Of a stretch of 64,000 bases of DNA, positions 3,042-62,446 are shown in pieces. The DNA lies in the IMG/VR virus record IMGVR_UViG_3300050014_000823, positions 235,145 through 299,144 of that record, one strand, 5' to 3'. The notes under the pieces were generated by a model that saw only the letters and a program-made list of their open reading frames with translations, was not told where the DNA came from and made no database searches. Both the position numbers and the translations under genes were made by a program. How positions within the stretch are numbered: the first letter of the stretch is position 1; each line of letters opens with the position of its first letter.

Positions 3042-3095
3042 AATAAAAAACCGTTAATATAAATACTAACGGTTTACATAAATTTTAAATTATAT

Positions 3096-3737
3096 TTATA
3101 ATATTGTAACTAAATATCTTTTAAGTAAAGTAAAATTAGGGAGAATTTTATAATATGTCAGGTACGTATCACCGCTTAAATCTTCGTGAGATTTAATTGC
3201 CCTATTACATAAACCCAATTTTATTTCATCTATACTAATCCGAAAAAAACCATACATATTGAGATTCACACCCCAAATACATTTTTGTTTTGAAATGGCT
3301 GTTCCTAACACATATAACATTTCGTCTTTGTAATTATAAAGCATGTCTATTTCTTTCGGCAAAACATCCATTAAACCCTGTACATCAACGATTTGAAAGA
3401 ATATTGGGTCTAAATTTACGTATAGGTATTTTGGACTGAAATAAAATTGTGGTACGGCTGCGATAAAACTTTCAATGCCTCTGACGTGCGATTGTTTGCT
3501 TTCTTCGAAGCTGCATTCCCAATAAAGTTCATTGCTAACTATGCGTTTTTTCAGAATATCCGCATTCTGAATTATCTGATTGTTGGGGTTTGAAGCCTTC
3601 ATGAACGACCATCCAACGTATAGTGTAGGAAGTTTGTCGAGACTGTCATACTCTTGTGGTCCTTTATAGTAGTTAATATAACTGACTTCGGTATGATTTA
3701 CCAGTTCTTTTTCATAAATAATGTTACCTATTTTCAT
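3096..3737 (-). CDS. Hypothetical protein
   Basis: 213-aa ORF overlapping the end of hldD; no motif recognised. Confidence 0.65.
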   Translation of the reverse strand: MKIGNIIYEKELVNHTEVSYINYYKGPQEYDSLDKLPTLYVGWSFMKASNPNNQIIQNADILKKRIVSNELYWECSFEESKQSHVRGIESFIAAVPQFYFSPKYLYVNLDPIFFQIVDVQGLMDVLPKEIDMLYNYKDEMLYVLGTAISKQKCIWGVNLNMYGFFRISIDEIKLGLCNRAIKSHEDLSGDTYLTYYKILPNFTLLKRYLVTIL

Positions 3738-4641
3738 TTTTTAGCTTATTTACGTATTTCAAAACACCATCTTCTAACTCATGAAAAGGCTTTTTATAGC
3801 CAGCAACCCTCAACTTATTCATCTTAGCCTCAGTAAAATACTGATACTTGTCTCTGATTTTAATTGGGGTGTCAATATAATTAATAGTTCCGGGATTACC
3901 AAGACTTTTAAAAACTGCTTTCGCCAAGTCATTAAAAGTACGTGCTTTTCCTGTTCCGACATTATAAATACCCGAAAGTGGTTTTTCTGTTGCCATAAAT
4001 ATGCAAACGTCAACAATATCATCCACATATACAAAATCACGTAGCTGTTCACCGTCTTTGTAGTCTGGACGATGTGACTTAAATAATTGAATTTTTGCAG
4101 GACCTGAACAAAACTCAATTTGGTGATATAAATGTAAAACAACAGAAGCCATTTTACCTTTATCGGCTTCTCCGTAGCCGTAAACATTAAAAAATTTTAG
4201 TCCGTACCAATAAGGTGGTTGTTTTTCCTGGACTTCTGCCCAAACATCGAACTGTTGCTTTGACCAACCGTAGGGATTAAGTGGTTGTAACTTAATGATA
4301 TCCTTCTCGTCATTAAAACCTAATTCTCCGTCACCATAGGTTGCTGCACTTGAAGCATAAACCAAAGGGATTTGGTATTCTGCGCAGATATTCCAGATAA
4401 ATATACTTGCGCCAACATTATATTCGTCAAAAAGATTTCTGTCCATAACAGTAGTATCGGTAATAGCACCTAAGTGATAAATAACATCTATATCTTTGGC
4501 GTGAATTAAAAGCCATTCATATATCGACTGCAGACTTTCGGTACGGGTATCAAGTACCACAACACCAATTGCTCCACGTCTTTGCAATTCTGCAACGAGA
4601 TTCTGACCAATAAAACCTAAACCACCTGTTACTACTATCAT
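3724..4641 (-). CDS. hldD: ADP-L-glycero-D-manno-heptose 6-epimerase (extended SDR)
   Basis: VTGGLGFIG Rossmann motif, YASSAATYG, PLNPYGWSK (YxxxK), FFNVYGYGEADKGKMASV, GEQLRDFVYVDD. Confidence 0.9.
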   Translation of the reverse strand: MIVVTGGLGFIGQNLVAELQRRGAIGVVVLDTRTESLQSIYEWLLIHAKDIDVIYHLGAITDTTVMDRNLFDEYNVGASIFIWNICAEYQIPLVYASSAATYGDGELGFNDEKDIIKLQPLNPYGWSKQQFDVWAEVQEKQPPYWYGLKFFNVYGYGEADKGKMASVVLHLYHQIEFCSGPAKIQLFKSHRPDYKDGEQLRDFVYVDDIVDVCIFMATEKPLSGIYNVGTGKARTFNDLAKAVFKSLGNPGTINYIDTPIKIRDKYQYFTEAKMNKLRVAGYKKPFHELEDGVLKYVNKLKNENR

Positions 4642-5066
4642 AAATTTTTTATTTTCTCAATAATATTTGTGCTTGACCTTTTATCTGTTGGGTAAAAAAC
4701 CACACCAAACCTTGAATTTTCACTGCCGATTACCTCTTTATTTCTATATTGGTCACCAACAACCATATAATCAATATCTAACTTATCGACTAAGTTTCTC
4801 AACTCATCATCTGTGTCAAAGATAAATACTTGATGAACCATTCGCAAATTTCGCATTATTGTTATTCTTGTGTTAATGTCATTAATGGGTCGTTTATCAC
4901 CCTTTAACCTCTTAACACGCTCATCTGTATCAAGTCCAACATATAGCTTATTTTCCGCATCGAGAACTGGATATACATCACCGGGTTGATAGTTCTTTGC
5001 ATACCAAAGTAAGTCTATGTGTCCCGTATGTAAGATGTCAAAGCACCCGTTTACCCAGATATTCAT
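4638..5066 (-). CDS. Heptose-1-phosphate nucleotidyltransferase (HldE/RfaE domain II, cytidylyltransferase fold)
   Basis: NGCFDILHTGH (HxGH), VGLDTDERVKRLKGDKRPIN, VVGDQY. Confidence 0.85.
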   Translation of the reverse strand: MNIWVNGCFDILHTGHIDLLWYAKNYQPGDVYPVLDAENKLYVGLDTDERVKRLKGDKRPINDINTRITIMRNLRMVHQVFIFDTDDELRNLVDKLDIDYMVVGDQYRNKEVIGSENSRFGVVFYPTDKRSSTNIIEKIKNL

Positions 5067-5350
5067 ATTTCTTCGATTCTTTTAGTTTTGTCATCAATAA
5101 GTAGGTCGTATGAGGGTTTAGTTTGGGTGTCAAGTCTGTGAAATTTACAACCCCAATCAGCAAGTTGTTTCGCTGTTAATTCTTTCCAATCTATACCAGT
5201 ATTTCCACCCCTGGCGGTCCAATAGGTAATTGAATGTCCTTCGTCAAAGAGTTTGTTGATTTTCTCAATCATATCATATCTTGGCTTGGCATTTGGATAT
5301 CCCTCACTACTGTCACAGATTGTTCCGTCTATGTCTACTAAAATTTTCAT
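5063..5350 (-). CDS. Small HAD-superfamily phosphatase
   Basis: ILVDIDGTIC (DxDGT motif I), YWTARG (motif II), KPSYDLLIDDK (motif III/IV). Confidence 0.75.
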   Translation of the reverse strand: MKILVDIDGTICDSSEGYPNAKPRYDMIEKINKLFDEGHSITYWTARGGNTGIDWKELTAKQLADWGCKFHRLDTQTKPSYDLLIDDKTKRIEEI

Positions 5351-6498
5351 TGCTGGCTATCTCCTTTCTCTATTCTTATTGAATCTTCCGGAAAATCGGT
5401 TGTTGACACTTCAACTATAATCGAATTTGTAATCGCCATTAACTGATGTTCTACGTTTTGTTTAATTTCTATTTTGTCTCCTCTTTTAAAAAGAAAATAA
5501 TCGAAAAAATCACCGTTTTCACTATTCATAACACATTCCAAACTACCCCACATACAAAACCACAATTCTTGTTTGAGAATATGTTTATGCCAACTAAATT
5601 TTTTTCCTTTGAAAAATACTAAATATTTTAAACAATATTTTTCGTTATTTACTAAGTGAATTTCCAACCCCCACCCCTTCTTAACTACCTTCGAGTTCGA
5701 ATTTAATCCAATAAAAACTTGTGTCCAGAATTCTCGATTGAAATTTGTAATATTATGACACTTTTTACATAATGTAATTAAATTATCTTCACCATTATTT
5801 TTTTTATTATAATCAACGTGATGTACATGTAAGTCTTCGGTTTCGCCACACAATTGACAACAATTACCGTCCCTCTCTTTTATTCTGTCTTTTAATCCTT
5901 TATTAAATCCTCTCGCATATTTATGGTCTAACCTAACATTATCTTCAATTTCTTTATTATTTCCATTATTTCTGGAACAATTTAGTGAACAAAATACCAC
6001 ATTCTGTCCCTTATGTAAATTTCTCCTTGTGTATTCAAAAACTTTACCACATCTTTTACACGTAGCCTTTTCTTTATCTTCAATCCACGCAGGATTATTT
6101 TCATTTAGTCTTTGTTGACTCAAGTACACGCTTAGACATTCTCTTGAACACACAATTCTTTCGCCATAATGCTTAAATTCATTACCACAAACCTCACAAT
6201 TACTCGTTGTTCTTATATCGGTCTTTGGTCTTACTGAATCTAACTGACATGTTTTTGAACAATATTGTCTGTCCTTCTCCCAAGTTGGTGCATTAAATTC
6301 TTTCTGACATTGTTTACAAACCAATGTTGATTTACGATTTTCATCAGTTTGTTTTTTATTTCGATTTCGCTTACACTCATAACAAATATCACTTTTAACA
6401 TATCTCTTATCGACATGTCCATATTTACAAGGTTCACCAGTAAAGTACCACTTCTGACCGATTTCTTTAGCTTCTTCCCTTGTAATTATCTCAATCAT
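5347..6498 (-). CDS. Fusion: zinc-ribbon/HNH endonuclease (N-terminal) + cupin sugar-isomerase-like domain (C-terminal)
   Basis: CxxC...CSxxC repeats and CQLCGETEDLHVHHVDYNKKNNGEDNLITLCKKCH (HNH), then VVKKGWGLEIHL...FSWHKHILKQELW...EHQLMAITNSIIVEVST (cupin). Confidence 0.75.
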   Translation of the reverse strand: MIEIITREEAKEIGQKWYFTGEPCKYGHVDKRYVKSDICYECKRNRNKKQTDENRKSTLVCKQCQKEFNAPTWEKDRQYCSKTCQLDSVRPKTDIRTTSNCEVCGNEFKHYGERIVCSRECLSVYLSQQRLNENNPAWIEDKEKATCKRCGKVFEYTRRNLHKGQNVVFCSLNCSRNNGNNKEIEDNVRLDHKYARGFNKGLKDRIKERDGNCCQLCGETEDLHVHHVDYNKKNNGEDNLITLCKKCHNITNFNREFWTQVFIGLNSNSKVVKKGWGLEIHLVNNEKYCLKYLVFFKGKKFSWHKHILKQELWFCMWGSLECVMNSENGDFFDYFLFKRGDKIEIKQNVEHQLMAITNSIIVEVSTTDFPEDSIRIEKGDSQQ

Positions 6499-7283
6499 AA
6501 TTTTGCTTTATTTAAATCCACAACAACCACACCCTTTTGAGTAACAACCCAAGCTGCGCACTTGTTTGCAAACTGAATTGCTTTGGAAATATCTTTATTT
6601 TTCATATAATCTGCAACCAAAGCCGCAAGGAAAGTATCTCCTGCACCACTTAAATCTCTGACTGGGTGTTCATCGTCTTCATTTAAAATCTCTTGATAAT
6701 CAAAAATACCTACTTTATTGTGTGAATACATTGCCCCCTTTTTACCGAGAGTTACAACTAATATATTACTGTATTGAAAGTCCAACCATTGTTTATTTTT
6801 CAGAAATTCTTTTTCGTTTATTTTAACACAAAAAACCTTATCACACCAATGACCAAAATCTTTCTTCGTGTCCATAAAAACCAACGGATGTGAATTTGCA
6901 ATGTGTTCTATTACTTCCTCACTAATAAAACCCTTATCATAGTCACTAATAACAATTGCTTCGTATTGACTATAATCAAACGCCATTTGCCTATCATATA
7001 TGTTTGGTCCAACAAATATCATGTCGTTTTCATCAACCCGAAGTAACATCTGATTTGAAACTTCATCAACATATCGGGTTTTTGTTATGCCACTATATGT
7101 GTGGATATCTGCATCAATACCTAATGCAAGTAAGTTTGCATAGACATTCACAGCCATACCACCATTAGACTTATCACCCAAAGGTTTAAAAACGGGTACT
7201 GGTGCTTCAGGACTTAACCTGTCGCATTTTCCATAGCGAAACACATCTTTACAACCGTCACCGATTACTAATACTTTACTCAC
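6495..7283 (-). CDS. Heptose-7-phosphate kinase (HldE/RfaE domain I, PfkB family)
   Basis: RLSPEAPVPV, GGMAVNVYANLLALG, SDYDKG, DLSGAGDTFLA. Confidence 0.88.
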   Translation of the reverse strand: MSKVLVIGDGCKDVFRYGKCDRLSPEAPVPVFKPLGDKSNGGMAVNVYANLLALGIDADIHTYSGITKTRYVDEVSNQMLLRVDENDMIFVGPNIYDRQMAFDYSQYEAIVISDYDKGFISEEVIEHIANSHPLVFMDTKKDFGHWCDKVFCVKINEKEFLKNKQWLDFQYSNILVVTLGKKGAMYSHNKVGIFDYQEILNEDDEHPVRDLSGAGDTFLAALVADYMKNKDISKAIQFANKCAAWVVTQKGVVVVDLNKAKL

Positions 7284-8311
7284 TGTAATCTCTTTAAAAT
7301 CTCAATTATTTTTTCCGCAGCGTGACCATCACCAAATGGGCACTCTACATTTATTTCATAATCATTATGTACTTCGTCAAAAAAGTACTTTAAGTCTTCT
7401 GGTCTTGTTACCAAAAGACCATTTACACCAATTGCTTCCGGACGTTCTGTAACAATTCGGCAAGTTAAACATATTTTATTGAAAAAACAAGATTCTTCCT
7501 GAAGTCCACCACTATCAGTTATTACCATACGACACTGAACCAGTAATTCAAGCATATCCTCATATGGCAATGGGTCAATAACTACAACATTTTTTAATAA
7601 ATGCTTCCATTTCTGCACATTTGGATTTGGATGCATTGGTAATATGAAAGCATATTGTGGATATTCCGTTGCAAGTTTTTCCAACTCAGTAAACCATCTG
7701 TCCATCCAATGATGATTTTCACGCCTATGTAATGTAACCAAAATTTTGTTGGTATATATGCATTTATCTTTATATAACAAGAGATTATCAATGACCGTAT
7801 TACCAACAACATAAACATCATCCAAAATTTTTTCTCCCGCAAGATTTCTTGCTGCCCAATCAGTTGGACATAGGTGAATATCTGCAATTTGTGATATTAT
7901 TCTCCTGTTGACTTCTTCGGGATATGGGTTTTCTTTGTCGTATGTTCGGAGTCCGGCTTCCAGGTGTATTACTTTAATACCATGATGAAATGCAGACAGT
8001 GCTACCGCAAATGCCGATGTGGTATCGCCTTGGACCATTACATATGCATCAACGAATTTACCTGTTTCTGTGTTGAGTTTACAGAAAGACCGAAAAAATT
8101 CCCACAACTGTCCTGTTATCGAACTAACAATCGAATCCAGTCTGTTGGGTTTATTCTCGATATTAAGAATCCAATCATATTCGAATTCTCCTATGTGAAC
8201 CTGTTGTCCAGTGAATAGTATGTTAAACTCAAAATTATTCTTCCTTAATTCATCGATAATCGGCTTAAGTTTAATGTATTCTGGTCGTGTGCCGTATGCT
8301 AATAATATCAT
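7280..8311 (-). CDS. wecB: UDP-N-acetylglucosamine 2-epimerase (non-hydrolysing)
   Basis: GTRPEYIKL, QGDTTSAFAVAL, HLEAGLRT, PEEVNRR, VTLHRREN, TDSGGLQEE. Confidence 0.92.
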   Translation of the reverse strand: MILLAYGTRPEYIKLKPIIDELRKNNFEFNILFTGQQVHIGEFEYDWILNIENKPNRLDSIVSSITGQLWEFFRSFCKLNTETGKFVDAYVMVQGDTTSAFAVALSAFHHGIKVIHLEAGLRTYDKENPYPEEVNRRIISQIADIHLCPTDWAARNLAGEKILDDVYVVGNTVIDNLLLYKDKCIYTNKILVTLHRRENHHWMDRWFTELEKLATEYPQYAFILPMHPNPNVQKWKHLLKNVVVIDPLPYEDMLELLVQCRMVITDSGGLQEESCFFNKICLTCRIVTERPEAIGVNGLLVTRPEDLKYFFDEVHNDYEINVECPFGDGHAAEKIIEILKRLQ

Positions 8312-9075
8312 TGTAAATCTTTTAATACTTCAGGTAATTCTTCGTTAAACTCAACTGCCTTACACCAAGCAGGTGGATTAACAGGATGCATATTAACCAT
8401 GTCTGGTGTCCATTTAAGCCATATATTATTAAACCACGCATCTACATCAAAATCATTATGATGACCCCAAGTTTTTAACTTTTCTCTGAGTTCACTATCG
8501 GTTAATACGTATGATGCATGATAACAAATGGCATTTGGAATATTAATGGTTGATATCCCCGTAGGTTTTCTTTTTCTTTCGAACCTATTTCCTCTGTTTA
8601 GGTTAATAAATATTTGGGGGTGACCAACAATTTGACTGCCTAAATTAGCTACTGTTATATGTTTAAATGATTTCCAGAAACTTATCCACCCACAAGTATA
8701 AATGTCGTAGCCGGGATGATTAACAATAAACATTTTCATCTGCTCAAAGCCATCGTGAAAATAAAATTCGTCTGCATCATGAATCATAAGATAGTCAATA
8801 CCATCTTCTTTGGCTCTGTCAACACATGCATTCCTTTGTGCTTCTTCGGTAAGCCAATCACCTAAAATCAAGACAATTTTATCAGCAAATCTCGATTCTC
8901 TTATTATTTTCAAGTCAAAAGAATTTACATATTCTTGTCTTGCGGTGGGGTTATATCCCCAAGGCTTATCGCTATATGCAATATAAATTTTATCTACATG
9001 TGGATATGCATTTTCAATATTTCTCATAATCCACTTGTCTTGACCGAACAATACTATGTGTGTTGCAAATTTCAT
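8308..9075 (-). CDS. GT-A fold glycosyltransferase (GT2-like)
   Basis: EAQRNAC and IHDADEFY (DxD), HASY; lies within the sugar operon. Confidence 0.75.
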   Translation of the reverse strand: MKFATHIVLFGQDKWIMRNIENAYPHVDKIYIAYSDKPWGYNPTARQEYVNSFDLKIIRESRFADKIVLILGDWLTEEAQRNACVDRAKEDGIDYLMIHDADEFYFHDGFEQMKMFIVNHPGYDIYTCGWISFWKSFKHITVANLGSQIVGHPQIFINLNRGNRFERKRKPTGISTINIPNAICYHASYVLTDSELREKLKTWGHHNDFDVDAWFNNIWLKWTPDMVNMHPVNPPAWCKAVEFNEELPEVLKDLQ

Positions 9076-9707
9076 TTCTTTTTAGCTATTAAACATCCAC
9101 AATCGGTTACAGAATCTTTAAATCCCTGAAAACCATCAAACATATGTTTCATTTCATCCCACGCACGCCAAACCCCGCATTGGTCTGGTTTACTTCTTTG
9201 CCAATAATCGTGCGTCCAAACATAATATTTATTTTGCATGTTATATTTAAGTATTAACTCAATTTCTTTTCTTACGTGCTCTTCTGTGTGGTCACCATCC
9301 TGTATAATTAAATCGAAATCAAATGGTTCTGACAATATTTTCAGCGAATCGTCAAGAACACGTTTAAAATTATTTGAATGTAACTTGTCATATTCAAGTC
9401 TTTCTTGAATGTCAAGCAATGTGACTTCACCGCAACCATTCATTTCAACCGCCTGCAATATGTGATTAGAACTTCTACCAAGAAAATTACCGATTTCCAA
9501 TATTCTTTTTGGCTTTAAAATGCGCATCAACACAAATATTGACTTGCCCTCACTTTCCCATATGCTTCCTGCAGGTTCTTCGGGATAGCCACCATATAAC
9601 GACTCATCATAATAACCACAAAAATCCGTAAGATTAACTCCCGTTAGTTTTTCAAACCCAATAAAATACGTCTTTATAAAGTCTTCCCTTTTATCCATTT
9701 TTTTCAA
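9072..9707 (-). CDS. Class I SAM-dependent methyltransferase
   Basis: ILEIGNFLGRSS motif I, DLIIQDGDH, VWTHDY. Confidence 0.75.
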   Translation of the reverse strand: MKKMDKREDFIKTYFIGFEKLTGVNLTDFCGYYDESLYGGYPEEPAGSIWESEGKSIFVLMRILKPKRILEIGNFLGRSSNHILQAVEMNGCGEVTLLDIQERLEYDKLHSNNFKRVLDDSLKILSEPFDFDLIIQDGDHTEEHVRKEIELILKYNMQNKYYVWTHDYWQRSKPDQCGVWRAWDEMKHMFDGFQGFKDSVTDCGCLIAKKK

Positions 9708-10254
9708 ACATAAAAAATTTTGCTGAAGTCAATAAAAAATTATCAACCTCTTCTATTAATTTAAAATCTTTACGATTCTCTTCCACCCAATCAGTAAACT
9801 TGCGATGAATGACATGTGGTGCACTACTATCGTAGCTATTAAAATTTGACGAAAATATTAACACGTATTTCTTTGACCCATCAAACAATCTGGTCAAATA
9901 TTTTTCATATTCCTCTTGAGAAAGAATGTGATATACTACGTCTAAGGATATACACAAATCTGCTTGGGGCAAATCCGACATTAATGAACAAAAATTCATG
10001 GCTTTATTGTTCTTAAACTTTTCGTGGCATAAATAAAGTGCATATGAAGATATGTCATAACCCATATAACTATCAAAACCCTTTAACAGACTAATTTGAT
10101 TACCATCACCACACCCAAAGTCCGATATTGTTTTAATTCCGAACTTCGTGATATAATTATTAATCACAGTCGCTTTATGGTCGGCAGTTTCGCCATACGA
10201 CCCATTACCCGAATTACCGCCTGCTCTATATCTCTCTTCCCAATAATTATTCAT
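9691..10254 (-). CDS. Class I SAM-dependent methyltransferase
   Basis: YWEERYRAGGNSG, ISDFGCGDG motif I, GYDIS, LCISLDVVYH. Confidence 0.8.
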   Translation of the reverse strand: MNNYWEERYRAGGNSGNGSYGETADHKATVINNYITKFGIKTISDFGCGDGNQISLLKGFDSYMGYDISSYALYLCHEKFKNNKAMNFCSLMSDLPQADLCISLDVVYHILSQEEYEKYLTRLFDGSKKYVLIFSSNFNSYDSSAPHVIHRKFTDWVEENRKDFKLIEEVDNFLLTSAKFFMFEKNG

Positions 10255-10264
10255 AATTAATTTA

Positions 10265-10918
10265 TTAATCGCTCCACCCTCTTAAACCTGCGTTTAGATG
10301 AATATACCCAACTTGTGGTGGCATTTCAACATTATATAGCATAGATTCACTGTGTACATATTTAATTATATTTGATTTTAAGTTTGTTGTTGCAATTTTT
10401 TTATAAAACCAAAGTTCGGGACAAATACTACCATTTTTATATTTGTCAATTTCCGATTCACTTTTTAATAGCGAAATTTTAGTAAACAATGCTTCAACCG
10501 CCCTTCTATTCATAAATATCACTTCCATCATTGCATATTCATTGCCATACCACACGGGGTTTCTATATACTAAATCACATTTATTTTCGAAAACACTTGT
10601 TATATGGTTCATAACAACATCAATAGACTTTGGATTTATTCTGACATCATCGTGTGAAAAAATTAAAACATCGAAATCTGTTTCCAATGACATATTACAT
10701 GACAACATCAGTCCATTAACACATCCAATTTTATGTTGGGGTGTTTCCATGTAATATTTAATACTTAGGTTATTTTCTTGACTAAAAAACTCATCATTTT
10801 TATAACTATTACACGCAATAAACTCTTGTGCGTCAGGAAAAAAACTTCTTTCAATATTTATTGTTTCCTTTAACGTTTTAAATCTATTATAAACATTATG
10901 TGCAAAAACTATTTTCAT
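10265..10918 (-). CDS. Putative GT-A glycosyltransferase
   Basis: IFSHDDV DxD-like motif; position in the sugar operon. Confidence 0.5.
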   Translation of the reverse strand: MKIVFAHNVYNRFKTLKETINIERSFFPDAQEFIACNSYKNDEFFSQENNLSIKYYMETPQHKIGCVNGLMLSCNMSLETDFDVLIFSHDDVRINPKSIDVVMNHITSVFENKCDLVYRNPVWYGNEYAMMEVIFMNRRAVEALFTKISLLKSESEIDKYKNGSICPELWFYKKIATTNLKSNIIKYVHSESMLYNVEMPPQVGYIHLNAGLRGWSD

Positions 10919-10927
10919 CTTACTAAT

Positions 10928-11656
10928 TTACCATATACAAACTTTATTTAATGTGTCAGCACCACGCAAATACCCTCTTGTTGGACCAAGACTCATCATT
11001 GAATCTAATGTCGAACCTGCGTCCAGATAAGTGTTGTTGGGGGAAGACTTAAAACATTCCATGATTAGAATGTTCGAAAACGGACCTGCACAGAAGAGAA
11101 ACAAATGATTTTCAATTTTTTTCTCTTCGATATATTTTTTCATCTTACCAACCAACTCAAAATCTTGCATCCACGCATTAGTACCAACGTAAAACGTCTG
11201 TACTATTTTACCTGCAAAGGGCAAGTGATTAATAACTGCCTTGTTGTTTACTACCATAACAACATTATAATTGTTAAACTCAGGAATTATTGTTTTCACA
11301 TAGTTGGGATAGTTTGCATTGACAAATATATTACCCCATGTCAGATGCTCATCGTCCTGTCCTGTTAGTGCTTTTAATTTTTCGTGTTTCTCGTTACCAA
11401 CACAACATCTACATGCAATTCCAACATAATAATTGTCTGCCTTGTATTGTGCAGATTCAAGTAATTTTTCCCTGAAGTATCCGTGGTCTGGTTGATTTGG
11501 GTCATAAATAAACTCACCGTTTAATTTTTGCCTTAAGTCAATGAATTCGTTGAAAAGAATAATCATTTCACCGTCATTGTTTCTTGAAACAGCAAAAGGT
11601 ATGTGATTTTTTATCTTTTCTTGAAACTTTATAAAATCTCCACCAAATGTTTTCAT
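10928..11656 (-). CDS. Putative GT-D/DUF1792-like glycosyltransferase
   Basis: FAVSRNNDGE, LFLFCAGPFSNILI and YLDAGS resemble the S-R-x-G-D-G-E / A-G-P / D-x-G motifs of GT-D fold proteins. Confidence 0.5.
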   Translation of the reverse strand: MKTFGGDFIKFQEKIKNHIPFAVSRNNDGEMIILFNEFIDLRQKLNGEFIYDPNQPDHGYFREKLLESAQYKADNYYVGIACRCCVGNEKHEKLKALTGQDDEHLTWGNIFVNANYPNYVKTIIPEFNNYNVVMVVNNKAVINHLPFAGKIVQTFYVGTNAWMQDFELVGKMKKYIEEKKIENHLFLFCAGPFSNILIMECFKSSPNNTYLDAGSTLDSMMSLGPTRGYLRGADTLNKVCIW

Positions 11657-11657
11657 A

Positions 11658-12392
11658 TCATTTAATATTATTTACAGTTTTCCAACCATTATTTATACAA
11701 TGTACACAAATCTCACCACGTAAATCCAGGTGATTTCCAATTCTCCATGAAGCATTTGCATCACTGCCAACCTCATTACCTGTTCGAAAATCCGAACTCC
11801 AGAGATTCTGATTATTATCTGGATGTGGTGGAACAAATGTATTAATGTTGCCGTACTTTTGTGCTAAGTAAGAAAATGTAATATCTTCACCATTATCCCA
11901 AGAATATGGCTTTTCATACCACATATATTTTGCCCATTCTTGTCTAAAAAACCAAGCATGTCCAACTAAATCAACACGTTCAACTTTATTGGAGTGTCCA
12001 CCATTCCAACCGAACTTATGATGAGGATAATACCCTTTACAGTCAACAATTACACCACTACCACCAAGTATACCGTTGCTTTCAGGTTTTTCAATTGTTT
12101 CTACACAATTTTTAAACCAGTCCTTCTGTGGAAGTATATCATCATCAAACATTGCAACGAACTTTGTTTTAAGCATTGGTAGTATGGAAAATCTACCCCA
12201 AAATTTAGTGTTCCAGTTACATGCATATGTTCGTATATCTTTATCAACAGGAAAATATTGTGCAACATCTGTTTTATTGTACCAAACATGAATGTTTTCG
12301 CTTTTAATTTCAACTGACTGTGCCTTTACTGCTTGAATTTGTCTTTCGAGCATATAGGGTCTTTTATATACATTTAATACAACACTAATCAT
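11658..12392 (-). CDS. GT2-like glycosyltransferase
   Basis: ISVVLNVYKR start, AMFDDDILP DxD, GEDITFS. Confidence 0.75.
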   Translation of the reverse strand: MISVVLNVYKRPYMLERQIQAVKAQSVEIKSENIHVWYNKTDVAQYFPVDKDIRTYACNWNTKFWGRFSILPMLKTKFVAMFDDDILPQKDWFKNCVETIEKPESNGILGGSGVIVDCKGYYPHHKFGWNGGHSNKVERVDLVGHAWFFRQEWAKYMWYEKPYSWDNGEDITFSYLAQKYGNINTFVPPHPDNNQNLWSSDFRTGNEVGSDANASWRIGNHLDLRGEICVHCINNGWKTVNNIK

Positions 12393-13366
12393 AATTTTTC
12401 AATATATTTTTGAGTATAAACACCGCCACCCCTTCTTGAGTCTGCATGAAGTTGTGAATCATCATTGCCGTCATGATAAACCATAGAATATTGTGTTCTG
12501 AAAATCCAACAACTCATTTCTTTAATTGCATCGTTTATTTGATTCCACGCACGCACAGGTGTTCCTGGTTTACTCACCGCAACAGCATCAACGGGTTTCA
12601 TCTTATATTCCATGTGTTTAATAACAGCATCGTCTATTAGTGCAATTCCATCCACAAAATCTTTTCTCTGCCACCATTGTTCGTGCTCAGTTATTTTTTT
12701 AAATGACCATAAATGTGGTGCAATTGCCATAATTCTGCCATTTTCTGCCTTTTTACTAAAAAACATATCCACAACCGCATCCAAGAATCCTTTAGAAAGT
12801 ATAAAATCGTCATCCATCTGTAAAACAACATGACAAGTAATATTCTTTAAAAATTCCCACATCTGATTATAACAATACCAGTGCAACACCTTTCCGTTGG
12901 GGGTTTTATTTTCAATGTATGTAAGATTTGAAAACTCATTTATTAAACTACCATATCTCGTATCAGTTGAACCGTCATTGAGAAGTATTATTTTTATTGT
13001 ATATTTTGTTGGTTGCTCGTGAAATTGTTGTATTAATCTCCGAACCTTTTCATATCTATTGTGTGACGGTATGCAAATAACTACGTCATAATCAACAAAT
13101 GCTTTTTTTTCATATATTCTAAAGCCACTTGCGCCATTTTCAGCACGTAAAGCAGTACGTTCAGAATTATTTAATCGACTCACATCAATATATGTGTTCT
13201 GTTTATCTTGTAAATAGACATCAGCACGTTTTCTATTTCTAATTTCATCCAAATCATCCATTGCTTTATTTCCTCTTTTATCGAGAAATAATAATTTCTG
13301 ATTTCGTAATTCGATTTTCTTCTCGATTAACCTCTTTCTCGAAATTTTTTGCCTTTTCATTACCAA
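12389..13366 (-). CDS. GT2 family glycosyltransferase with basic N-terminal extension
   Basis: VICIPSHNR, LLNDGSTD, LQMDDDF. Confidence 0.78.
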   Translation of the reverse strand: MVMKRQKISRKRLIEKKIELRNQKLLFLDKRGNKAMDDLDEIRNRKRADVYLQDKQNTYIDVSRLNNSERTALRAENGASGFRIYEKKAFVDYDVVICIPSHNRYEKVRRLIQQFHEQPTKYTIKIILLNDGSTDTRYGSLINEFSNLTYIENKTPNGKVLHWYCYNQMWEFLKNITCHVVLQMDDDFILSKGFLDAVVDMFFSKKAENGRIMAIAPHLWSFKKITEHEQWWQRKDFVDGIALIDDAVIKHMEYKMKPVDAVAVSKPGTPVRAWNQINDAIKEMSCWIFRTQYSMVYHDGNDDSQLHADSRRGGGVYTQKYIEKL

Positions 13367-14970
13367 CTTTCAGCTATAACTTCCTCATATAGTGTAAATA
13401 CTTTATTGGCAGAAAAGTCCGAGTGATATTTTTCCAAGTCCTGTGGAACTTCCTGTAATTCCTTATTTTGAATGTTTCCTTGGTCATCCACAACATATAT
13501 CCAACCTGGTTTTCCACATAAAAATCCCTCAATGGTTGTTCTGCCTTTAAAAATTCCTGCAGTATAGTCACACTTCTTAATGTATTCTTCGACATTCTGC
13601 TTAACCCCAAGATATTTCACATGGTCGCCAACGAGAATATTAGCATACCCGCCATTATCCGCACCGATTATCTGTAATAATTGACCATTCGTTCTGGTCA
13701 TTTCAACTAAGTCGAGTAAAATGTTTTTTCTTAAATGGTCAAGTGTACCAATAAACAGTACAATCTCTTTGGGATTCTTAACAGGCGTATAGTTTGTATT
13801 AAACCTCTTAGTATCGAATGGATTGTCAATTGTGACAATCTTATCAGCCTCAATACCGTAAGACCTAATATAATCGGTGATGCTATCACGAATACTTATG
13901 TATCTCGCAATTCTTGGATTGATAATTGGTTCTTCGAAGGTAGGTATGACTTCGCTTCTGACATGCATAACTGCAGGAGTATTCGGGTATAAGCCTAACA
14001 TAAGTTCCCCGATAGGTTTGTGGTTAATGTGAATGATATCGAATTCCTGCTCATTTTTAATAAAATGAAATTTACCGTCTTGGTCCAGTACATAATTGGG
14101 TAAATTTATGTAACTGCAAACTCTTACACCATTTGCAAGTGCTTTCTTGTGTAATGGTTCGCCAACAACTTGAGAAATTATAGTAACATCACAACCCTGT
14201 TTAACAAGTTCCTTTGAAAGTTCGTAATTTGACATTTCAGAACCCGTGTAGTTTTTAAAGAACTGACAGCAGAGCAGTACTTTTAATCTACCCTCAGAAA
14301 CATGACGAATAGGTAAATTATATTCACTGGCGAACTTTATCCTATTTCTGTCCCAATCTGGATTAGTTTGACCCATTGACTTGTGTAATACTCTTATTGA
14401 GGCGGTTACACCAATATTAACATCTTTCAGATAGTTATCTACACAAAATGGTAAGTCATAAAAGTGAAATAAACCATAATTCTCGTTGAAATTTTTAACT
14501 ATTTGGTCGGGGTCAACACCCATGAATAAACCATCAATAATTATAACTGGTTTTACTCCGTTGAATTGTGGTGAATACTCACTTACCCATGTACTCATGC
14601 CGTTTGTGTGTTCAACAATACCATACATTTTGCTTCTGTCTTCCCACCACATGCCAGATGCCGGGAGAAATGTTGTCCCCGCAAGTCCAATAATTGCGTA
14701 GTCGGTATGATTAAATTGGTTTAACAATACTTTTCCCCAGTTTTTTGTCTTATATACCATGTCGTTATGACAAAAAACAAACACACAATCTTTTTCTGCG
14801 TGGGTTTTTAGTGCATCGTTATAAATCTGTGGCAAACCAAACTGTCCAAAGTTCGGATAACAAATGGTTTTATGTTGAACTCCAATAGTCTCTTTTATGT
14901 GTGATATGAATTTATTATTTTCTTCCTCAGACAAATGTGAGGAAAACACTACGACAATATTATTTTTCAT
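13360..14970 (-). CDS. Two-domain glycosyltransferase (GT-A N-terminal + GT-B/GT4-like C-terminal)
   Basis: VFCHNDM, IIDGLFMG, FHFYDLPFC (GT-A); GSEMSNYELSKEL...FDIIHINH, IDNPFDTKRF, GRTTIEGFLCGKP (GT-B). Confidence 0.78.
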   Translation of the reverse strand: MKNNIVVVFSSHLSEEENNKFISHIKETIGVQHKTICYPNFGQFGLPQIYNDALKTHAEKDCVFVFCHNDMVYKTKNWGKVLLNQFNHTDYAIIGLAGTTFLPASGMWWEDRSKMYGIVEHTNGMSTWVSEYSPQFNGVKPVIIIDGLFMGVDPDQIVKNFNENYGLFHFYDLPFCVDNYLKDVNIGVTASIRVLHKSMGQTNPDWDRNRIKFASEYNLPIRHVSEGRLKVLLCCQFFKNYTGSEMSNYELSKELVKQGCDVTIISQVVGEPLHKKALANGVRVCSYINLPNYVLDQDGKFHFIKNEQEFDIIHINHKPIGELMLGLYPNTPAVMHVRSEVIPTFEEPIINPRIARYISIRDSITDYIRSYGIEADKIVTIDNPFDTKRFNTNYTPVKNPKEIVLFIGTLDHLRKNILLDLVEMTRTNGQLLQIIGADNGGYANILVGDHVKYLGVKQNVEEYIKKCDYTAGIFKGRTTIEGFLCGKPGWIYVVDDQGNIQNKELQEVPQDLEKYHSDFSANKVFTLYEEVIAESW

Positions 14971-15649
14971 TTAGCTTATATATTTCTACCTGTGCTTCCA
15001 ATAATGCTTTTGTTTTTTCCATAGAATAGTCTCTATTAAAACATCCAATTAAAATGCTTTGTAAATTTTTTCTTAATTTTAATTCTGATTCGCTTGCATG
15101 TTGCCAAGGATTAGCTGGAAAAGTTTTTCCAAACACTAATATCTGAATTGTTCTTGCTTTATCCTTATAATCTTCCATTGTGGCTTCTTTATCAAAACGT
15201 CTCATGTAATACATATTTACCGCATTACACAATTCGCCATACAAATCAGAAGTTTCTTTACGTAATTCAATGAGGCTATCATAAACAAATTTTATTACAT
15301 GATACTCAAATTTAGGATTAAGCCACATTGAGAATTTAATGAAAAGATATGGATGCATCCATATCTCATCTGGCTTTCTTCCCATAAGAGTGTTTCCACC
15401 CTTTTTAATCGTAAATGCCTGATTTTGAGCCAAGTCACTATTCTGACTTGGGATATTTTCTTCTTTAAAAAGGACCTCAATGAAATCCTCTGTCTGTTTT
15501 AAACCCAAAAAATTTGCAATTTTTTTTGTGTCGTTATTAGACCTGTTCCATTGTTGAATTAAATAACTTGCATTGAACATTTCGTCTTTTGTACGCTGAT
15601 TAACTAAATAATCACCCATTTGACGAACCATTATCACACTACTTTTCAT
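14960..15649 (-). CDS. KilA-N domain DNA-binding protein
   Basis: QRTKDEMFNASYL, WMHPYLFIKFSMWLNPKFEYHV. Confidence 0.8.
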   Translation of the reverse strand: MKSSVIMVRQMGDYLVNQRTKDEMFNASYLIQQWNRSNNDTKKIANFLGLKQTEDFIEVLFKEENIPSQNSDLAQNQAFTIKKGGNTLMGRKPDEIWMHPYLFIKFSMWLNPKFEYHVIKFVYDSLIELRKETSDLYGELCNAVNMYYMRRFDKEATMEDYKDKARTIQILVFGKTFPANPWQHASESELKLRKNLQSILIGCFNRDYSMEKTKALLEAQVEIYKLNEK

Positions 15650-15676: not shown

Positions 15677-15707
15677 CAAATATAAACAATAAAAAAGTCA
15701 ATGTCAA
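15677..15707 (-). promoter_or_regulatory. Bacteroidota-type host sigma promoter (TTG-N20-TATATTTG) upstream of KilA-N and the sugar operon
   Basis: Minus strand TATATTTG (15684-15677) matches TAnnTTTG; TTG lies 20 nt upstream (15707-15705). Confidence 0.55.
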
Positions 15708-27511: not shown

Positions 27512-27520
27512 TTTATAAAC

Positions 27521-28351
27521 ATGAATACAACAGTAATAATTCCAATACATGAGTATAACGATAAGATTTCAAGTCTTTTAGACCACGCAATTGAATCGGT
27601 ACTTAAACAAGAAAAACTAACAGAGCAACCACAAATTCTTGTGGTATATGCTTCTGCAATAGAAGAAGGTATAATCGCCTTTCAACAGAGTCTGTTGAGA
27701 AAGTACCAGAATGCTCTTGACATTCTTTTTATTAAGAATGACGGTAAAACCGATTATCAGTCACAAGTTAATCTTGGAGTAGAGTCGGTAACTACCGCAT
27801 ATTTCTCGGTACTTGAATTTGATGACGAATATGGTACTACCTATTTCAGCATTGCAAACAAATACATTAAAGCATATCCGGAAATTGACGTATTTCTTAC
27901 CATGATGATTGAGGTCAACGAACAGAATATGGGTATTAAGTTAACCAATGAAACCGTATGGGCACAACAGTTTGTAGGTGAGAACGGTGAAATGGGTTAC
28001 TTGAACCTTAACGCATTGAAACAGTACACAGACTTTAAAATGAGTGGTGCTATTATTAAAAAGTCAGAATTTGTCAACGTAGGTAAGTTTAAATCAAACA
28101 TTAAGTTAACCTTCATGTATGAATTCTTACTCAGAGCATTAAACAATGCCTGCAAAGTCTTCAGTATTCCAAAAATCGGCTACAAACACCTTGCAACACG
28201 TGAAGACAGTATGTTTGATGTTTACCAGAAGAACATGCCTGCAGACGAAAGAAAATTTTGGTTTGATACTGCAACTAAAGAAGCAAACTTTGTCAATGAC
28301 AGAACTATTGACATGTCAAGAATGCTGAAGATAGTTGTAGATGAAAAATAA
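27521..28351 (+). CDS. GT2 family glycosyltransferase
   Basis: TVIIPIHE, QVNLGVESV, SVLEFDDEY. Confidence 0.75.
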   Translation: MNTTVIIPIHEYNDKISSLLDHAIESVLKQEKLTEQPQILVVYASAIEEGIIAFQQSLLRKYQNALDILFIKNDGKTDYQSQVNLGVESVTTAYFSVLEFDDEYGTTYFSIANKYIKAYPEIDVFLTMMIEVNEQNMGIKLTNETVWAQQFVGENGEMGYLNLNALKQYTDFKMSGAIIKKSEFVNVGKFKSNIKLTFMYEFLLRALNNACKVFSIPKIGYKHLATREDSMFDVYQKNMPADERKFWFDTATKEANFVNDRTIDMSRMLKIVVDEK

Positions 28352-28374
28352 TCGTATACTGAATTCTACCGTGA

Positions 28375-62414: not shown

Positions 62415-62446
62415 AACAAATTCTTTACTATAAATAGTTTGCAATA

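What the first reader, a model, noticed from the sequence alone, without database searches (positions are those of the whole stretch)
8308..14970. Six glycosyltransferase-like genes and two methyltransferases beside the tail module
GT-A, GT-B and GT-D-like enzymes plus two SAM methyltransferases follow the nucleotide-sugar genes, enough to build and O-methylate an oligosaccharide. No flippase, polymerase or lipid-carrier initiating transferase is visible, so a cytoplasmic acceptor (virion protein or DNA) fits better than an exported polysaccharide. Virion glycosylation is established in some actinobacteriophages; the Ser/Thr-rich sheath insert and FN3 protein are candidate acceptors (inference).
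Basis: partly seen in the sequence, partly recalled or inferred. Interest (0 to 1): 0.7.

Follow-up and report, generated by a model that had tools for sequence, protein, structure and literature searches.

The report
Export-less glycan-building operon in jumbo phage
An uncultured 299-kb T4-like phage from peat carries a 12.6-kb operon of soluble sugar-adding, sugar-methylating and activated-sugar-making enzymes with no export genes, so it most likely decorates something inside the infected cell, probably the phage's own particle, though the target is not proven.

Summary
Window 8308-14970 is eight back-to-back minus-strand genes: six glycosyltransferase-like (seven GT domains: GT-A, GT-B, GT-D) and two SAM methyltransferases.

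They belong to one tightly coupled unit of about 12.6 kb (15707 to 3048). It also encodes WecB (UDP-ManNAc) and an ADP-heptose module: HldA-like, small HAD, HldC-like, HldD and a cupin.

No initiating phosphoglycosyl transferase, flippase, polymerase/ligase or ABC-2 permease was found in the 299-kb genome. None of 297 cassette ORFs in 35 related contigs has more than one hydrophobic segment.

The first gene, a bifunctional GT-A+GT-B enzyme ("GT536"), is a core gene of a large uncultured phage clade, about as conserved as the tail sheath. The genes behind it are hypervariable.

DNA glycosylation is unlikely: the only ThyA homolog has a canonical active site, and no TET/JBP was found.

Tail adjacency is not conserved in more distant relatives. 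The poly-Thr proteins I found as candidate acceptors are absent from relatives.

Best reading (about 0.42): cytoplasmic O-glycosylation of virion proteins. Main rival (about 0.3): remodelling of host LPS core or another host-exported glycolipid.

This is a new member of a known kind (GT/sugar islands of large T4-like phages) whose function is untested.

The parts
15679..15707 (-). Promoter-like site in the 66-nt gap upstream of the KilA-N gene: TTGACA-17-TATATT. It overlaps TATATTTG, which matches the Bacteroidota -7 motif TAnnTTTG (that motif is from my own knowledge).
   Evidence: This is a consensus match only, so it is inferred.
14960..15649 (-). KilA-N domain protein (229 aa), the first ORF of the unit. 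Relatives lack it, so it is probably a mobile insertion.
   Evidence: Pfam KilA-N 1.4e-14. No homolog in loci L007-L041.
13360..14970 (-). GT536: bifunctional glycosyltransferase with an N-terminal GT-A domain (Glyco_tranf_2_5, residues 1-225) and a C-terminal GT4-type retaining GT-B domain (226-536). It is the conserved anchor of the cassette.
12389..13366 (-). GT2 glycosyltransferase (325 aa), with NDGSTD and MDDDF motifs.
   Evidence: Glycos_transf_2 9.3e-10; sequence.
11658..12392 (-). GT2 glycosyltransferase (244 aa), with an FDDD motif. It travels with the GT-D gene as a module in L007, L009, L015, L016 and L019.
   Evidence: Glycos_transf_2 1.6e-7.
10928..11656 (-). GT-D (DUF1792-like) glycosyltransferase (242 aa).
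   Evidence: invariant D28-G29-E30.
10265..10918 (-). GT-A-fold protein (217 aa) with an HDD motif.
   Evidence: Atlas structure search, TM 0.64-0.75 to GT2/GT-A clusters. No Pfam hit.
9691..10254 (-). Class I SAM methyltransferase (187 aa, DFGCGDG motif). Presumed to be a sugar O-methyltransferase.
   Evidence: Methyltransf_11 above its cut-off; phrog_3382 at 3.5e-12. The substrate is inferred.
9072..9707 (-). Class I SAM methyltransferase (211 aa, Methyltransf_24). Presumed to be a sugar O-methyltransferase.
   Evidence: A 69% ortholog lies in the cassette of L015.
8308..9075 (-). Weak GT2-like GT-A protein (255 aa) with a DAD motif.
7280..8311 (-). WecB, the non-hydrolysing UDP-GlcNAc 2-epimerase (makes UDP-ManNAc).
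   Evidence: TIGR00236, 257 bits against a cut-off of 210; Epimerase_2 2.8e-73.
6495..7283 (-). HldA-like PfkB sugar kinase (heptose-7-phosphate kinase type).
   Evidence: rfaE_dom_I 2.7e-35, below the equivalog cut-off; PfkB.
5347..6498 (-). HNH homing-endonuclease domain (residues about 1-260) fused in frame to a small cupin (about 262-383). The cupin is a stand-alone 125-aa gene at the same place in a relative's heptose module.
   Evidence: HNH 2.7e-6. Weak WbuC and PMI-type cupin hits. Sequence. Relative: PfkB, Cupin_2, GIY-YIG, CTP_transf_like, Epimerase.
5063..5350 (-). Minimal HAD phosphatase (95 aa) with DIDGT, TARG and DDK motifs. Presumed analogue of GmhB.
   Evidence: BT0820-family HAD 2.5e-5; sequence.
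4638..5066 (-). HldC-like heptose-1-phosphate adenylyltransferase (cytidylyltransferase fold).
   Evidence: rfaE_dom_II 4.8e-26, below the cut-off; CTP_transf_like.
3724..4641 (-). HldD, the ADP-glyceromanno-heptose 6-epimerase.
   Evidence: TIGR02197, 329.8 bits against a cut-off of 274.6. 79 of the 80 best genomic homologs are Bacteroidota, at 50-56% identity.
3096..3737 (-). p213: conserved protein of unknown function that closes the cassette in the close clade.
   Evidence: Orthologs at the cassette end in L009, L012 and L015. 65% identity to G001. No family hit.
3048..3075 (-). Terminator-like hairpin (12 pairs) followed by a T-run, right after p213.
   Evidence: Inferred.
27521..28351 (+). 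p276: a weak GT2-like protein in the conserved PhoH-side block. Possibly a further core glycosyltransferase.
   Evidence: Glycos_transf_2 E 0.0023, below the cut-off. 71% identity to G001, rank 11 of 114.

Best explanation
The phage builds a glycan inside the infected cell and attaches it to its own virion proteins.

Shown:
- A single operon encodes only soluble enzymes: seven GT domains, two SAM methyltransferases, WecB and an HldA/HAD/HldC/HldD heptose module.
- No export or lipid-carrier machinery is encoded.
- The bifunctional first enzyme, GT536, is a core gene of the clade, while the genes behind it are hypervariable.

Inferred:
- GT536, perhaps with the second core GT4-like enzyme at genome 171397-172812, puts the first one or two sugars on a conserved phage-encoded acceptor, most likely Ser/Thr of surface-exposed virion proteins.
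- The cassette GTs, including the GT-D enzyme, extend this into a strain-specific oligosaccharide. It would contain L,D-heptose and ManNAc and be capped by O-methylation.
- Phage-made ADP-heptose and UDP-ManNAc, plus host nucleotide sugars, supply the donors.
- The result would be a variable glycan coat on the particle.
For: - All 17 genes from 15649 to 3096 are translationally coupled and lack transmembrane segments.
- No Bac_transf, WecA/MraY, Wzx, Wzy_C or ABC-2 permease was found in the genome, and the controls were positive.
- None of 297 cassette ORFs in 35 related contigs has more than one hydrophobic segment.
- GT536 and GT471 are core genes, at 67.7% and 72.5% identity to a 340-kb relative of 25% GC. 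The sheath is at 70.4% and the median ortholog at 58.8%. This points to a phage-intrinsic or universal acceptor.
- The cassette is hypervariable: 311 ORFs (297 of the relatives plus 14 of the window's cassette) fall into 145 clusters, and content already differs at 76-77% GT536 identity. That is expected for an exposed glycan.
- L021 and L041 keep GT536 with almost no cassette. This fits an initiator with optional elaboration.
- The founding GT-D enzyme extends an O-glycan on a protein (PMC5063993); that this happens in the cytoplasm is from my own knowledge.
- Virion glycosylation is established for mycobacteriophages (as cited in PMC12619734).
- DNA is disfavoured as acceptor.
Against: - No acceptor has been identified and no expression or proteomic data exist. 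No RNA run was listed.
- Tail adjacency is lost in the distant clade, where the neighbours are nucleotide-metabolism genes.
- The operon may have a host-type (early) promoter rather than a late one.
- The poly-Thr proteins are absent from five relatives that keep the system.
- GT4 folds do not discriminate between protein, lipid, small-molecule and DNA acceptors.
- The best-known use of ADP-L,D-heptose is the LPS core.
Confidence: 0.42

Rival explanations
1. The operon remodels the host envelope. Peripheral cytoplasmic GTs would extend host LPS inner/outer core, LOS or another host-initiated lipid-linked glycan with heptose, ManNAc and methylated sugars. Host MsbA, Wzx or WaaL would then export it, changing the cell surface during infection, for example to block superinfection or stop progeny adsorbing to lysing cells.
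For: - ADP-L,D-heptose (HldD above the equivalog cut-off) is chiefly an LPS-core donor (my own knowledge).
- The host is probably a Gram-negative Bacteroidota.
- Core extension needs no phage-encoded flippase, so the lack of export genes is compatible.
- Cassettes of relatives carry families typical of LPS and capsule loci: GT25, GT11, WcbI, PglF-like, DegT.
- The same idea is the standard proposal for GT/epimerase islands of large T4-like cyanophages (PMC12801897).
- There is a possible host-type promoter.
Against: - No GT9 heptosyltransferase.
- No membrane-anchoring segments in any GT.
- GT536 and GT471 are conserved like structural proteins across phages of 25% and 35% GC, which presumably have different hosts.
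- The lifestyle appears lytic T4-like. This is an impression only: I ran no search for lysogeny genes.
- Not one of 35 diverse cassettes carries a glycan-specific Wzx/Wzy or ABC transporter.
Confidence: 0.3
2. The operon hypermodifies DNA. The GTs would build mono- to oligosaccharides on a modified base of the phage genome to evade restriction and other nucleic-acid defences, as in T4 (glucosyl-hmC), RB69/DLP3 (arabinosyl-5hoC) or MT/TET/GT systems.
For: - The structural neighbours of GT536 and GT471 (BshA 3mbo, MshA 3c4q, SPS 6kih, tll1591 7fg9, 7qsg, PimA 2gej) are the same PDB entries reported for the phage DNA arabinosyl- and glucosyltransferases.
- In distant relatives the anchor GT lies next to dUTPase, a 3'-5' exonuclease and NUDIX genes.
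- The kinase, phosphatase and nucleotidyltransferase logic parallels the UDP-arabinose pathway.
- A C5-cytosine methyltransferase exists in the genome.
Against: - The genome has a single ThyA-family gene. It keeps L143-P-P-C146-H, D169 and N177 (LPPCH, QRSCD, PFN). By the published diagnostic residues it is therefore a dUMP methylase, not an hmC, hoC or hmU synthase.
- No Tet_JBP was found even at E<=1.
- The C5-MT is about 185 kb from the operon, and none of the four neighbouring ORFs scanned with Pfam is a dioxygenase.
- Cassettes of 8-13 genes with aminotransferases, methyltransferases and FabH-like enzymes far exceed any known DNA glycan, which reaches a trisaccharide at most.
- Caveat: the record is only 91% complete.
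Confidence: 0.08
3. The acceptor is some other cytoplasmic molecule. Candidates are a host protein (takeover or inactivation by glycosylation), a soluble metabolite or a storage oligosaccharide. The operon would then be a metabolic or host-takeover module rather than a coat-building one.
For: - All the enzymes are soluble.
- The nearest GT4 structural neighbours include small-molecule GTs: BshA, MshA, sucrose-phosphate synthase and tetrahydrobiopterin GT.
- There is a possible early promoter.
Against: - Seven GT domains plus two MTs, and hypervariable elaboration, are hard to reconcile with a single metabolic product or the inactivation of one host protein.
- Hypervariability is the hallmark of exposed glycans.
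Confidence: 0.1

Closest known systems
GT / NDP-sugar ('LPS' or cell-wall synthesis and modification) gene islands of large T4-like cyanophages (P-SSM2, S-SCSM1, S-SCSM2R; PMC12801897)
   Same: A T4-like myovirus of more than 200 kb. Many GTs (13 in S-SCSM2R) clustered with nucleotide-sugar epimerases. No experimentally shown target.
   Different: No detectable sequence relatives of GT536 or the GT-D gene in 50,697 cultured-phage records. The host here is probably Bacteroidota from peat. This operon has an ADP-heptose module, a conserved bifunctional anchor GT and a sharply bounded hypervariable cassette.
Virion O-glycosylation of mycobacteriophages (Freeman et al. 2023, known here only through citing papers)
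   Same: Phage-encoded cytoplasmic GTs with no export genes. The close clade places them in the structural gene block.
   Different: Those systems have only a few GTs, are found in siphoviruses of Actinobacteria, and have targets (capsid and tail-tube C-termini) shown by mass spectrometry. Here there are 7 GT domains plus sugar pathways and MTs, no homology, and an unknown target.
Autonomous glycosylation machinery of giant viruses (chlorovirus PBCV-1 capsid glycans with methylated sugars; clade-specific Mimivirus fibril glycan clusters). From my own knowledge, not tested here.
   Same: Virus-encoded soluble GTs, nucleotide-sugar pathways and a sugar methyltransferase. Lineage-specific variable clusters. 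The glycan is built in the cytoplasm on virion proteins.
Phage DNA glycosylation clusters (T4 hmC-glucose; RB69/DLP3 5hoC-arabinose; RL38J1; PMC13326640)
   Same: T4-like background, GT4-like GT-B enzymes and a phage-encoded activated-sugar pathway.
   Different: The defining hydroxylated-pyrimidine synthase is absent: ThyA is canonical at L143, D169 and N177. There is no TET. The cassette is far larger and more varied.
Serine-rich-repeat adhesin glycosylation (GtfA/B plus dGT1 with a GT-D domain; PMC5063993)
   Different: That is a bacterial system coupled to accessory Sec export. No GtfB-like partner or SRR substrate has been identified here.
Bacterial O-antigen / capsule loci
   Same: The same enzyme repertoire and hypervariability between conserved flanks.
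   Different: All defining membrane components are absent: initiating transferase, Wzx, Wzy/WaaL and ABC transporter.

Membership tests
Phage DNA glycosylation via hydroxylated pyrimidines (T4 / RB69 / DLP3 type) | ThyA-family dCMP hydroxymethylase or 5hodCMP synthase (N177 changed for dCMP specificity; D169N for 5hoC) | tested here: not met
   There is one PF00303 gene in the genome. It keeps LPPCH, QRSCD and PFN and scores as the thymidylate synthase equivalog. The criteria come from PMC13326640.
Phage DNA glycosylation via 5mC methyltransferase + TET/JBP dioxygenase + GT | A TET/JBP (5mYOX) dioxygenase, usually next to the MT and the GT | tested here: not met
   No PF12851 match at E<=1. 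The C5-MT lies about 185 kb away, and its annotatable neighbours are PAP2 and NinG-like genes.
Phage DNA glycosyltransferases | A GT-B enzyme acting on DNA | tested here: inconclusive
   GT536 and GT471 are GT4-like GT-B enzymes with the same PDB neighbours as known DNA GTs. The fold does not reveal the acceptor.
Wzx/Wzy-dependent surface polysaccharide locus | Initiating phosphoglycosyl transferase (Bac_transf or WecA/MraY family) | tested here: not met
   PF02397 and PF00953 absent at E<=1, with positive controls.
Wzx/Wzy-dependent surface polysaccharide locus | Wzx flippase and Wzy polymerase / WaaL ligase | tested here: not met
   PF01943 and PF04932 absent. No ORF with more than 5 hydrophobic segments in the genome. 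None with more than 1 among 297 cassette ORFs of relatives.
ABC-transporter-dependent polysaccharide locus | ABC-2 type permease (Wzm) | tested here: not met
   PF01061 absent at E<=1.
gtrABC-type phage seroconversion | Membrane proteins GtrA (flippase), GtrB (membrane-anchored GT2) and GtrC | tested here: not met
   Hydropathy only. The GT2 proteins here have no hydrophobic segments, and no polytopic protein lies in or near the operon.
ADP-L-glycero-beta-D-manno-heptose pathway | HldD 6-epimerase | tested here: met
   TIGR02197, 329.8 bits against a cut-off of 274.6.
ADP-L-glycero-beta-D-manno-heptose pathway | HldA kinase, GmhB phosphatase and HldC adenylyltransferase | tested here: inconclusive
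   The best NCBIfam hits are rfaE domains I and II, but below the equivalog cut-offs (122 vs 345 bits; 91 vs 181.5 bits). The phosphatase is a 95-aa minimal HAD with all its motifs.
ADP-L-glycero-beta-D-manno-heptose pathway | GmhA sedoheptulose-7-phosphate isomerase (SIS domain) | tested here: not met
   No SIS_2 match in the genome. The isomerase is either supplied by the host or replaced by the cupin that sits in the module here and in a relative. That replacement is inference.
GT-D (DUF1792) glycosyltransferases | Homology to PF08759/PF22882 and a conserved acidic metal-binding motif (DXE; the motif is recalled from the literature, not read here) | tested here: met
   The protein has no direct Pfam hit. 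Homologs at 43-54% identity (E 1e-55 to 1e-73) carry the domains. Atlas features score 0.97. D28-G-E30 is invariant.
Actinobacteriophage virion glycosylation | Glycan demonstrated on capsid or tail proteins | not testable with these tools
   This needs virions, and the phage is known only from peat metagenomes.
Actinobacteriophage virion glycosylation | Sequence relationship of the GTs to those of glycosylated phages | tested here: not met
   tblastn of GT536 and of the GT-D protein against 50,697 phage records gave no match.
GT / sugar islands of large T4-like phages | A T4-like genome of more than 200 kb with clustered GTs and NDP-sugar enzymes of untested function | tested here: met
   The genome is 299 kb, with gp23-like MCP, gp18-like sheath and a T4 baseplate hub. 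The operon is as described. The comparison is with PMC12801897.

The most novel reading that the evidence does not exclude
A widespread, entirely uncultured clade of roughly 300-kb T4-like phages, probably infecting Bacteroidota, autonomously coats its virions with strain-specific oligosaccharides.

The glycans would contain heptose and ManNAc and be O-methylated. A conserved bifunctional GT-A+GT-B initiator would start them on a conserved virion protein, and a recombination-hotspot cassette shuffled by homing endonucleases and TnpB would diversify them.

This would be a bacterial-virus counterpart of the giant-virus glycan coats. The glycan would act as a variable shield or adhesin.
Probability: 0.33. 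Interest if true: 0.75.

Novelty: new member of a known kind. Interest (0 to 1): 0.5.

Why it matters
Clusters of glycosyltransferase and sugar-pathway genes in large phages have been noted for twenty years without a demonstrated target.

This locus is a clean example. It is a single operon of soluble enzymes only. Its anchor enzyme has more than a thousand metagenomic homologs, and its tail is hypervariable.

If the target is the virion, glycan coats would be a general and diversifying feature of environmental jumbo phages. That would bear on adsorption, stability in soils and peat, evasion of host and grazer recognition, and phage engineering. If the target is the host envelope, the locus would be a large lytic-phage surface-remodelling system.

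GT536 is a compact, well-folding protein (model pLDDT 89.6), so the question can be approached by heterologous expression without culturing the phage.

Tried and rejected
- **Cultured-phage searches.** Megablast of the region and tblastn of GT536 and the GT-D protein against 50,697 phage records found nothing. Only the second core GT (GT471) has weak hits, at 24-33% identity, in Phapecoctavirus-like phages.
- **PDB sequence searches.** Searches with the 255-, 217- and 242-aa proteins, GT536 and GT471 gave nothing usable.
- **Poly-Thr proteins as acceptors.** Three mucin-like poly-Thr proteins looked like ideal acceptors. However, a search for 10 or more consecutive Thr codons found 4 tracts in this genome and none in five relatives' records, including a complete 340-kb genome. 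That genome also has no window above 47% Ser/Thr. I rejected any coupling to the conserved GT system.
- **Tail adjacency as evidence.** Rejected as general, because it is not conserved in the clade at about 40% identity.
- **T4 late-promoter motif TATAAATA.** It is enriched in the window (23 sites against 9.3 expected). It does not sit upstream of the operon or the sheath, so it says nothing about timing.
- **Generic promoter and terminator scan.** Sigma-70-like promoter sites were somewhat more numerous than in shuffles (116 against a mean of 90.6, sd 9.1) and terminator-like sites were not (8 against 10.4). The scan may not suit a Bacteroidota host. I report only the two sites that fall in the right intergenic gaps.
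- **RNA data.** No RNA run was listed, so I did not attempt read laying.
- **Fold searches.** Searches with GT536 and GT471 return generic GT4 enzymes with protein, lipid, small-molecule and DNA acceptors alike. They cannot assign the acceptor.
- **Literature.** The Freeman 2023 paper is not held in the library.

Full report
**1. Where the window lies**

The window is the last 64 kb of a 299,144-bp IMG/VR virus record. CheckV puts it at 91% complete, and its GC is 35%. It is a distant T4-like myovirus:
- a gp23-like major capsid protein at 57058-58731;
- an intein-bearing gp21-like prohead protease at 60495-62444;
- a 963-aa gp18-like sheath at 35791-38682;
- a T4-type baseplate hub at 23365-24279.

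The best cultured relative of the sheath is Microcystis phage Mel-JY01, at 31% identity. The DNA occurs in peat metagenomes. An identical 85-kb contig comes from a second sample id (L006).

**2.

Window 8308-14970 corresponds exactly to eight consecutive minus-strand ORFs.

Pfam gives significant hits for five of them:
- the 536-aa protein (Glyco_tranf_2_5 plus Glyco_transf_4);
- the 325-aa and 244-aa proteins (Glycos_transf_2);
- both methyltransferases (Methyltransf_24 and Methyltransf_11, each above its gathering score).

The other three needed other evidence.
- The 242-aa protein is GT-D. Its homologs at 43-54% identity carry PF08759/PF22882, language-model features agree, and a D-G-E motif is invariant.
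- The 217-aa protein has a GT-A fold, from the Atlas structure comparison.
- The 255-aa protein is a weak GT2.

All have DxD-like motifs.

**3. The real unit is larger**

From the KilA-N gene (start 15649) to p213 (end 3096), 17 genes overlap or are 10 nt or less apart. A promoter-like site lies in the only upstream gap (15707-15679). A hairpin with a T-run follows p213 (3075-3048). Both are consensus matches only.

Downstream of the GTs lie:
- WecB, above the equivalog cut-off;
- an HldA-like kinase;
- an HNH endonuclease fused to a small cupin;
- a 95-aa minimal HAD phosphatase;
- an HldC-like nucleotidyltransferase;
- HldD, above the equivalog cut-off.

This module would make UDP-ManNAc and ADP-L,D-heptose. 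Two qualifications apply. The kinase and transferase score below their equivalog cut-offs. No GmhA (SIS) gene exists in the genome.

In a relative whose GT536 is 77% identical, the module reads PfkB, stand-alone Cupin_2, GIY-YIG, CTP_transf_like, Epimerase. The cupin is therefore a genuine module member and may replace GmhA, which is inference. The same spot has been invaded by two different homing endonucleases.

79 of the 80 best genomic relatives of HldD are Bacteroidota, at 50-56% identity. That suggests a Bacteroidota host.

**4. No export or lipid-carrier machinery**

HMM searches of the whole genome found none of the following, and all had positive controls:
- Bac_transf;
- WecA/MraY family;
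- Wzx;
- Wzy_C / O-antigen ligase;
- ABC-2 permease.

There is also no GT9 heptosyltransferase.

A hydropathy scan finds no ORF with more than five hydrophobic segments. The one large protein with five is the 846-aa protein beside the hub, probably a tape measure.

**5. Comparative genomics**

GT536 has 1291 homologs at E<=1e-5 in metagenomic proteins. The best 120 are 62-81% identical and lie on contigs of up to 340 kb. 36 viral contigs were fetched.

- *Close clade.* The order hub, p846, p1106, p103, (p93), GT536 is fixed. A variable set of genes follows, then p213, GIY-YIG, p263, p148 and p243.
- *Distant clade (about 40% identity).* GT536 instead follows NUDIX, p296, a second GT (GT471), a 3'-5' exonuclease and dUTPase. 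After 8-13 variable genes comes the PhoH block. Tail adjacency is therefore not a conserved property.
- *Minimal cassettes.* Two contigs, L021 and L041, keep GT536 with almost no cassette.

The 297 cassette ORFs of the relatives, clustered together with 14 proteins of the window's own cassette (311 in all), fall into 145 sequence clusters. None of the 297 has more than one hydrophobic segment. A Pfam census of 60 representatives gives:
- glycosyltransferase families GT2, GT11, GT17, GT25 and Gly_transf_sug;
- sugar-nucleotide enzymes: SDR epimerases/dehydratases, RmlD, DegT aminotransferases, UDP-glucose dehydrogenase, PglF-like and WcbI;
- FkbM methyltransferases and a FabH-like enzyme;
- a TnpB element.

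Content already differs completely at 76-77% GT536 identity.

Against a complete 340-kb relative of only 25% GC, 114 reciprocal best hits have a median identity of 58.8%. Selected ranks:

| Protein | Identity | Rank of 114 |
|---|---|---|
| GT471 | 72.5% | 10 |
| p276 (weak GT2) | 71.3% | 11 |
| Sheath | 70.4% | 15 |
| GT536 | 67.7% | 21 |
| p846 | about 51% | 82 |
| p1106 | about 51% | 84 |

So there is a core glycosylation set plus a hypervariable elaboration cassette.

**6. Which acceptor?**

*DNA is unlikely.* The only ThyA-family gene (49201-50280) keeps LPPCH, QRSCD and PFN, that is L143, C146, D169 and N177. By the diagnostic residues of the 2026 NAR study it is an ordinary thymidylate synthase with an insertion of about 40 aa. 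No TET/JBP exists. The intein-bearing C5-methyltransferase is about 185 kb away, and none of its four neighbours scanned with Pfam is a dioxygenase.

*Fold does not decide.* The GT536 model (pLDDT 89.6) and the GT471 model (pLDDT 69.7) match generic GT4 enzymes: BshA, MshA, PimA, PglA, WaaG, GtfA, TarM and T4 AGT.

*Candidate protein acceptors.* The sheath insert reaches 45% Ser/Thr over 40 aa, and its ortholog in the 340-kb relative reaches 47%.

Outside the window, three proteins in the fibre region carry T10-T17 runs followed by LPP/APP, set between Cys-rich modules. These are classic mucin-like linkers. However, such tracts are absent from five relatives that keep the system. They may be decorated in this phage, but they cannot be the conserved acceptor.

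**7. Weighing the explanations**

Four things point to a conserved phage-encoded protein acceptor that carries a variable, exposed glycan, that is, virion glycosylation (about 0.42):
- the inventory of soluble enzymes only, across the whole family;
- core conservation of the initiating enzymes across phages with very different GC;
- hypervariable elaboration;
- precedents: mycobacteriophage virions, protein-directed GT-D enzymes, and giant-virus machinery with sugar methyltransferases (my own knowledge).

The main rival is extension of host LPS core or LOS, or another host-initiated lipid-linked glycan, which needs no phage export genes (about 0.3). Three points favour it: the canonical role of ADP-heptose, the LPS- and capsule-like enzyme repertoire, and a possible host-type promoter. 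This is also the usual proposal for cyanophage GT islands.

DNA (about 0.08) and other cytoplasmic acceptors (about 0.1) trail behind.

**8. Novelty**

Clusters of many GTs and NDP-sugar enzymes in large T4-like phages are a known but functionally unresolved feature. This is a new member of that kind. Its distinctive features are:
- no relatives of GT536 or the GT-D gene among cultured phages;
- an ADP-heptose module apparently acquired from Bacteroidota;
- a conserved bifunctional anchor GT;
- a sharply bounded cassette associated with mobile elements.

Four literature searches found no description of such a system.

Noticed in passing
Outside the window: G000:C1:153723-156263, 163015-165867 and 203002-203733 (all minus strand): Three proteins in the fibre region carry mucin-like poly-Thr linkers (T10-T17 followed by LPP/APP) between Cys-rich modules. 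The 950-aa protein also has five FN3-like N-terminal repeats. The 243-aa protein overlaps the stop codon of a tail-fibre-like 666-aa protein. Five related phage records have no such tracts.
   Followed up: yes
window 5347-6498 (-), compared with the contig of P0009: An HNH endonuclease is fused in frame to the cupin of the heptose module. In a close relative the cupin is a separate 125-aa gene, followed at the same site by a GIY-YIG endonuclease. Two different homing endonucleases have therefore invaded the same spot independently.
   Followed up: partly
window 2262-3041 (-) and 14960-15649 (-): A GIY-YIG-like ORF (weak hit, E 0.003) lies just past the operon terminator. A KilA-N gene found only in this phage lies at the operon head. 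One relative's cassette carries a TnpB/IS605 element. Mobile genes thus frame the variable cassette.
   Followed up: partly
window 49201-50280 (+): The thymidylate synthase has a canonical active site but carries an insertion of about 40 aa between the catalytic Cys region and the QRSCD motif. A dUTPase lies just upstream at 48055-48480.
   Followed up: partly
Outside the window: G000:C1:61231-63063 (-) and 60638-61234 (-): A C5-cytosine DNA methyltransferase is interrupted by an intein. Next to it is a PAP2-family membrane phosphatase with 3 hydrophobic segments, a family that includes Und-PP and lipid A phosphatases.
   Followed up: no
window 60495-62444 (-): The gp21-like prohead protease also carries an intein. 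This is the second intein in the genome.
   Followed up: no
Outside the window: G000:C1:171397-172812 (-): A second core GT4-like glycosyltransferase (GT471, phrog_7162) is 72.5% identical to its ortholog in a 25%-GC relative. It lies adjacent to GT536 in the distant clade. It has weak homologs in Phapecoctavirus-like phages, Klebsiella phages and Campylobacter phages.
   Followed up: partly
window 24418-29130 (+): A PhoH, p247, p404, p276, p251 block forms the far boundary of the cassette in distant relatives. p404 is the fifth most conserved protein (78%) and has no family assignment. p276 is a weak GT2.
   Followed up: no
window 15716-15997 (-) and 16000-16311 (-): Two small conserved proteins lie between p1106 and GT536. 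p93 has a sub-threshold DUF6527/'BubE' hit (E 0.0012). p103 is about the size of a spike-tip protein. Neither has an assigned function.
   Followed up: no
window 20584-23124 (-): An 846-aa protein next to the baseplate hub has five hydrophobic segments at residues 582-720. It is probably the tape-measure/hub protein. It is the only large ORF in the genome with that many hydrophobic segments.
   Followed up: no
L049-L065 (G001, a 339,898-bp relative with direct terminal repeats): A complete relative has only 25% GC, against 35% here, yet keeps the hub, p846, p1106, p103, GT536 architecture and 114 orthologs. The clade therefore spans very different host compositions.
   Followed up: partly
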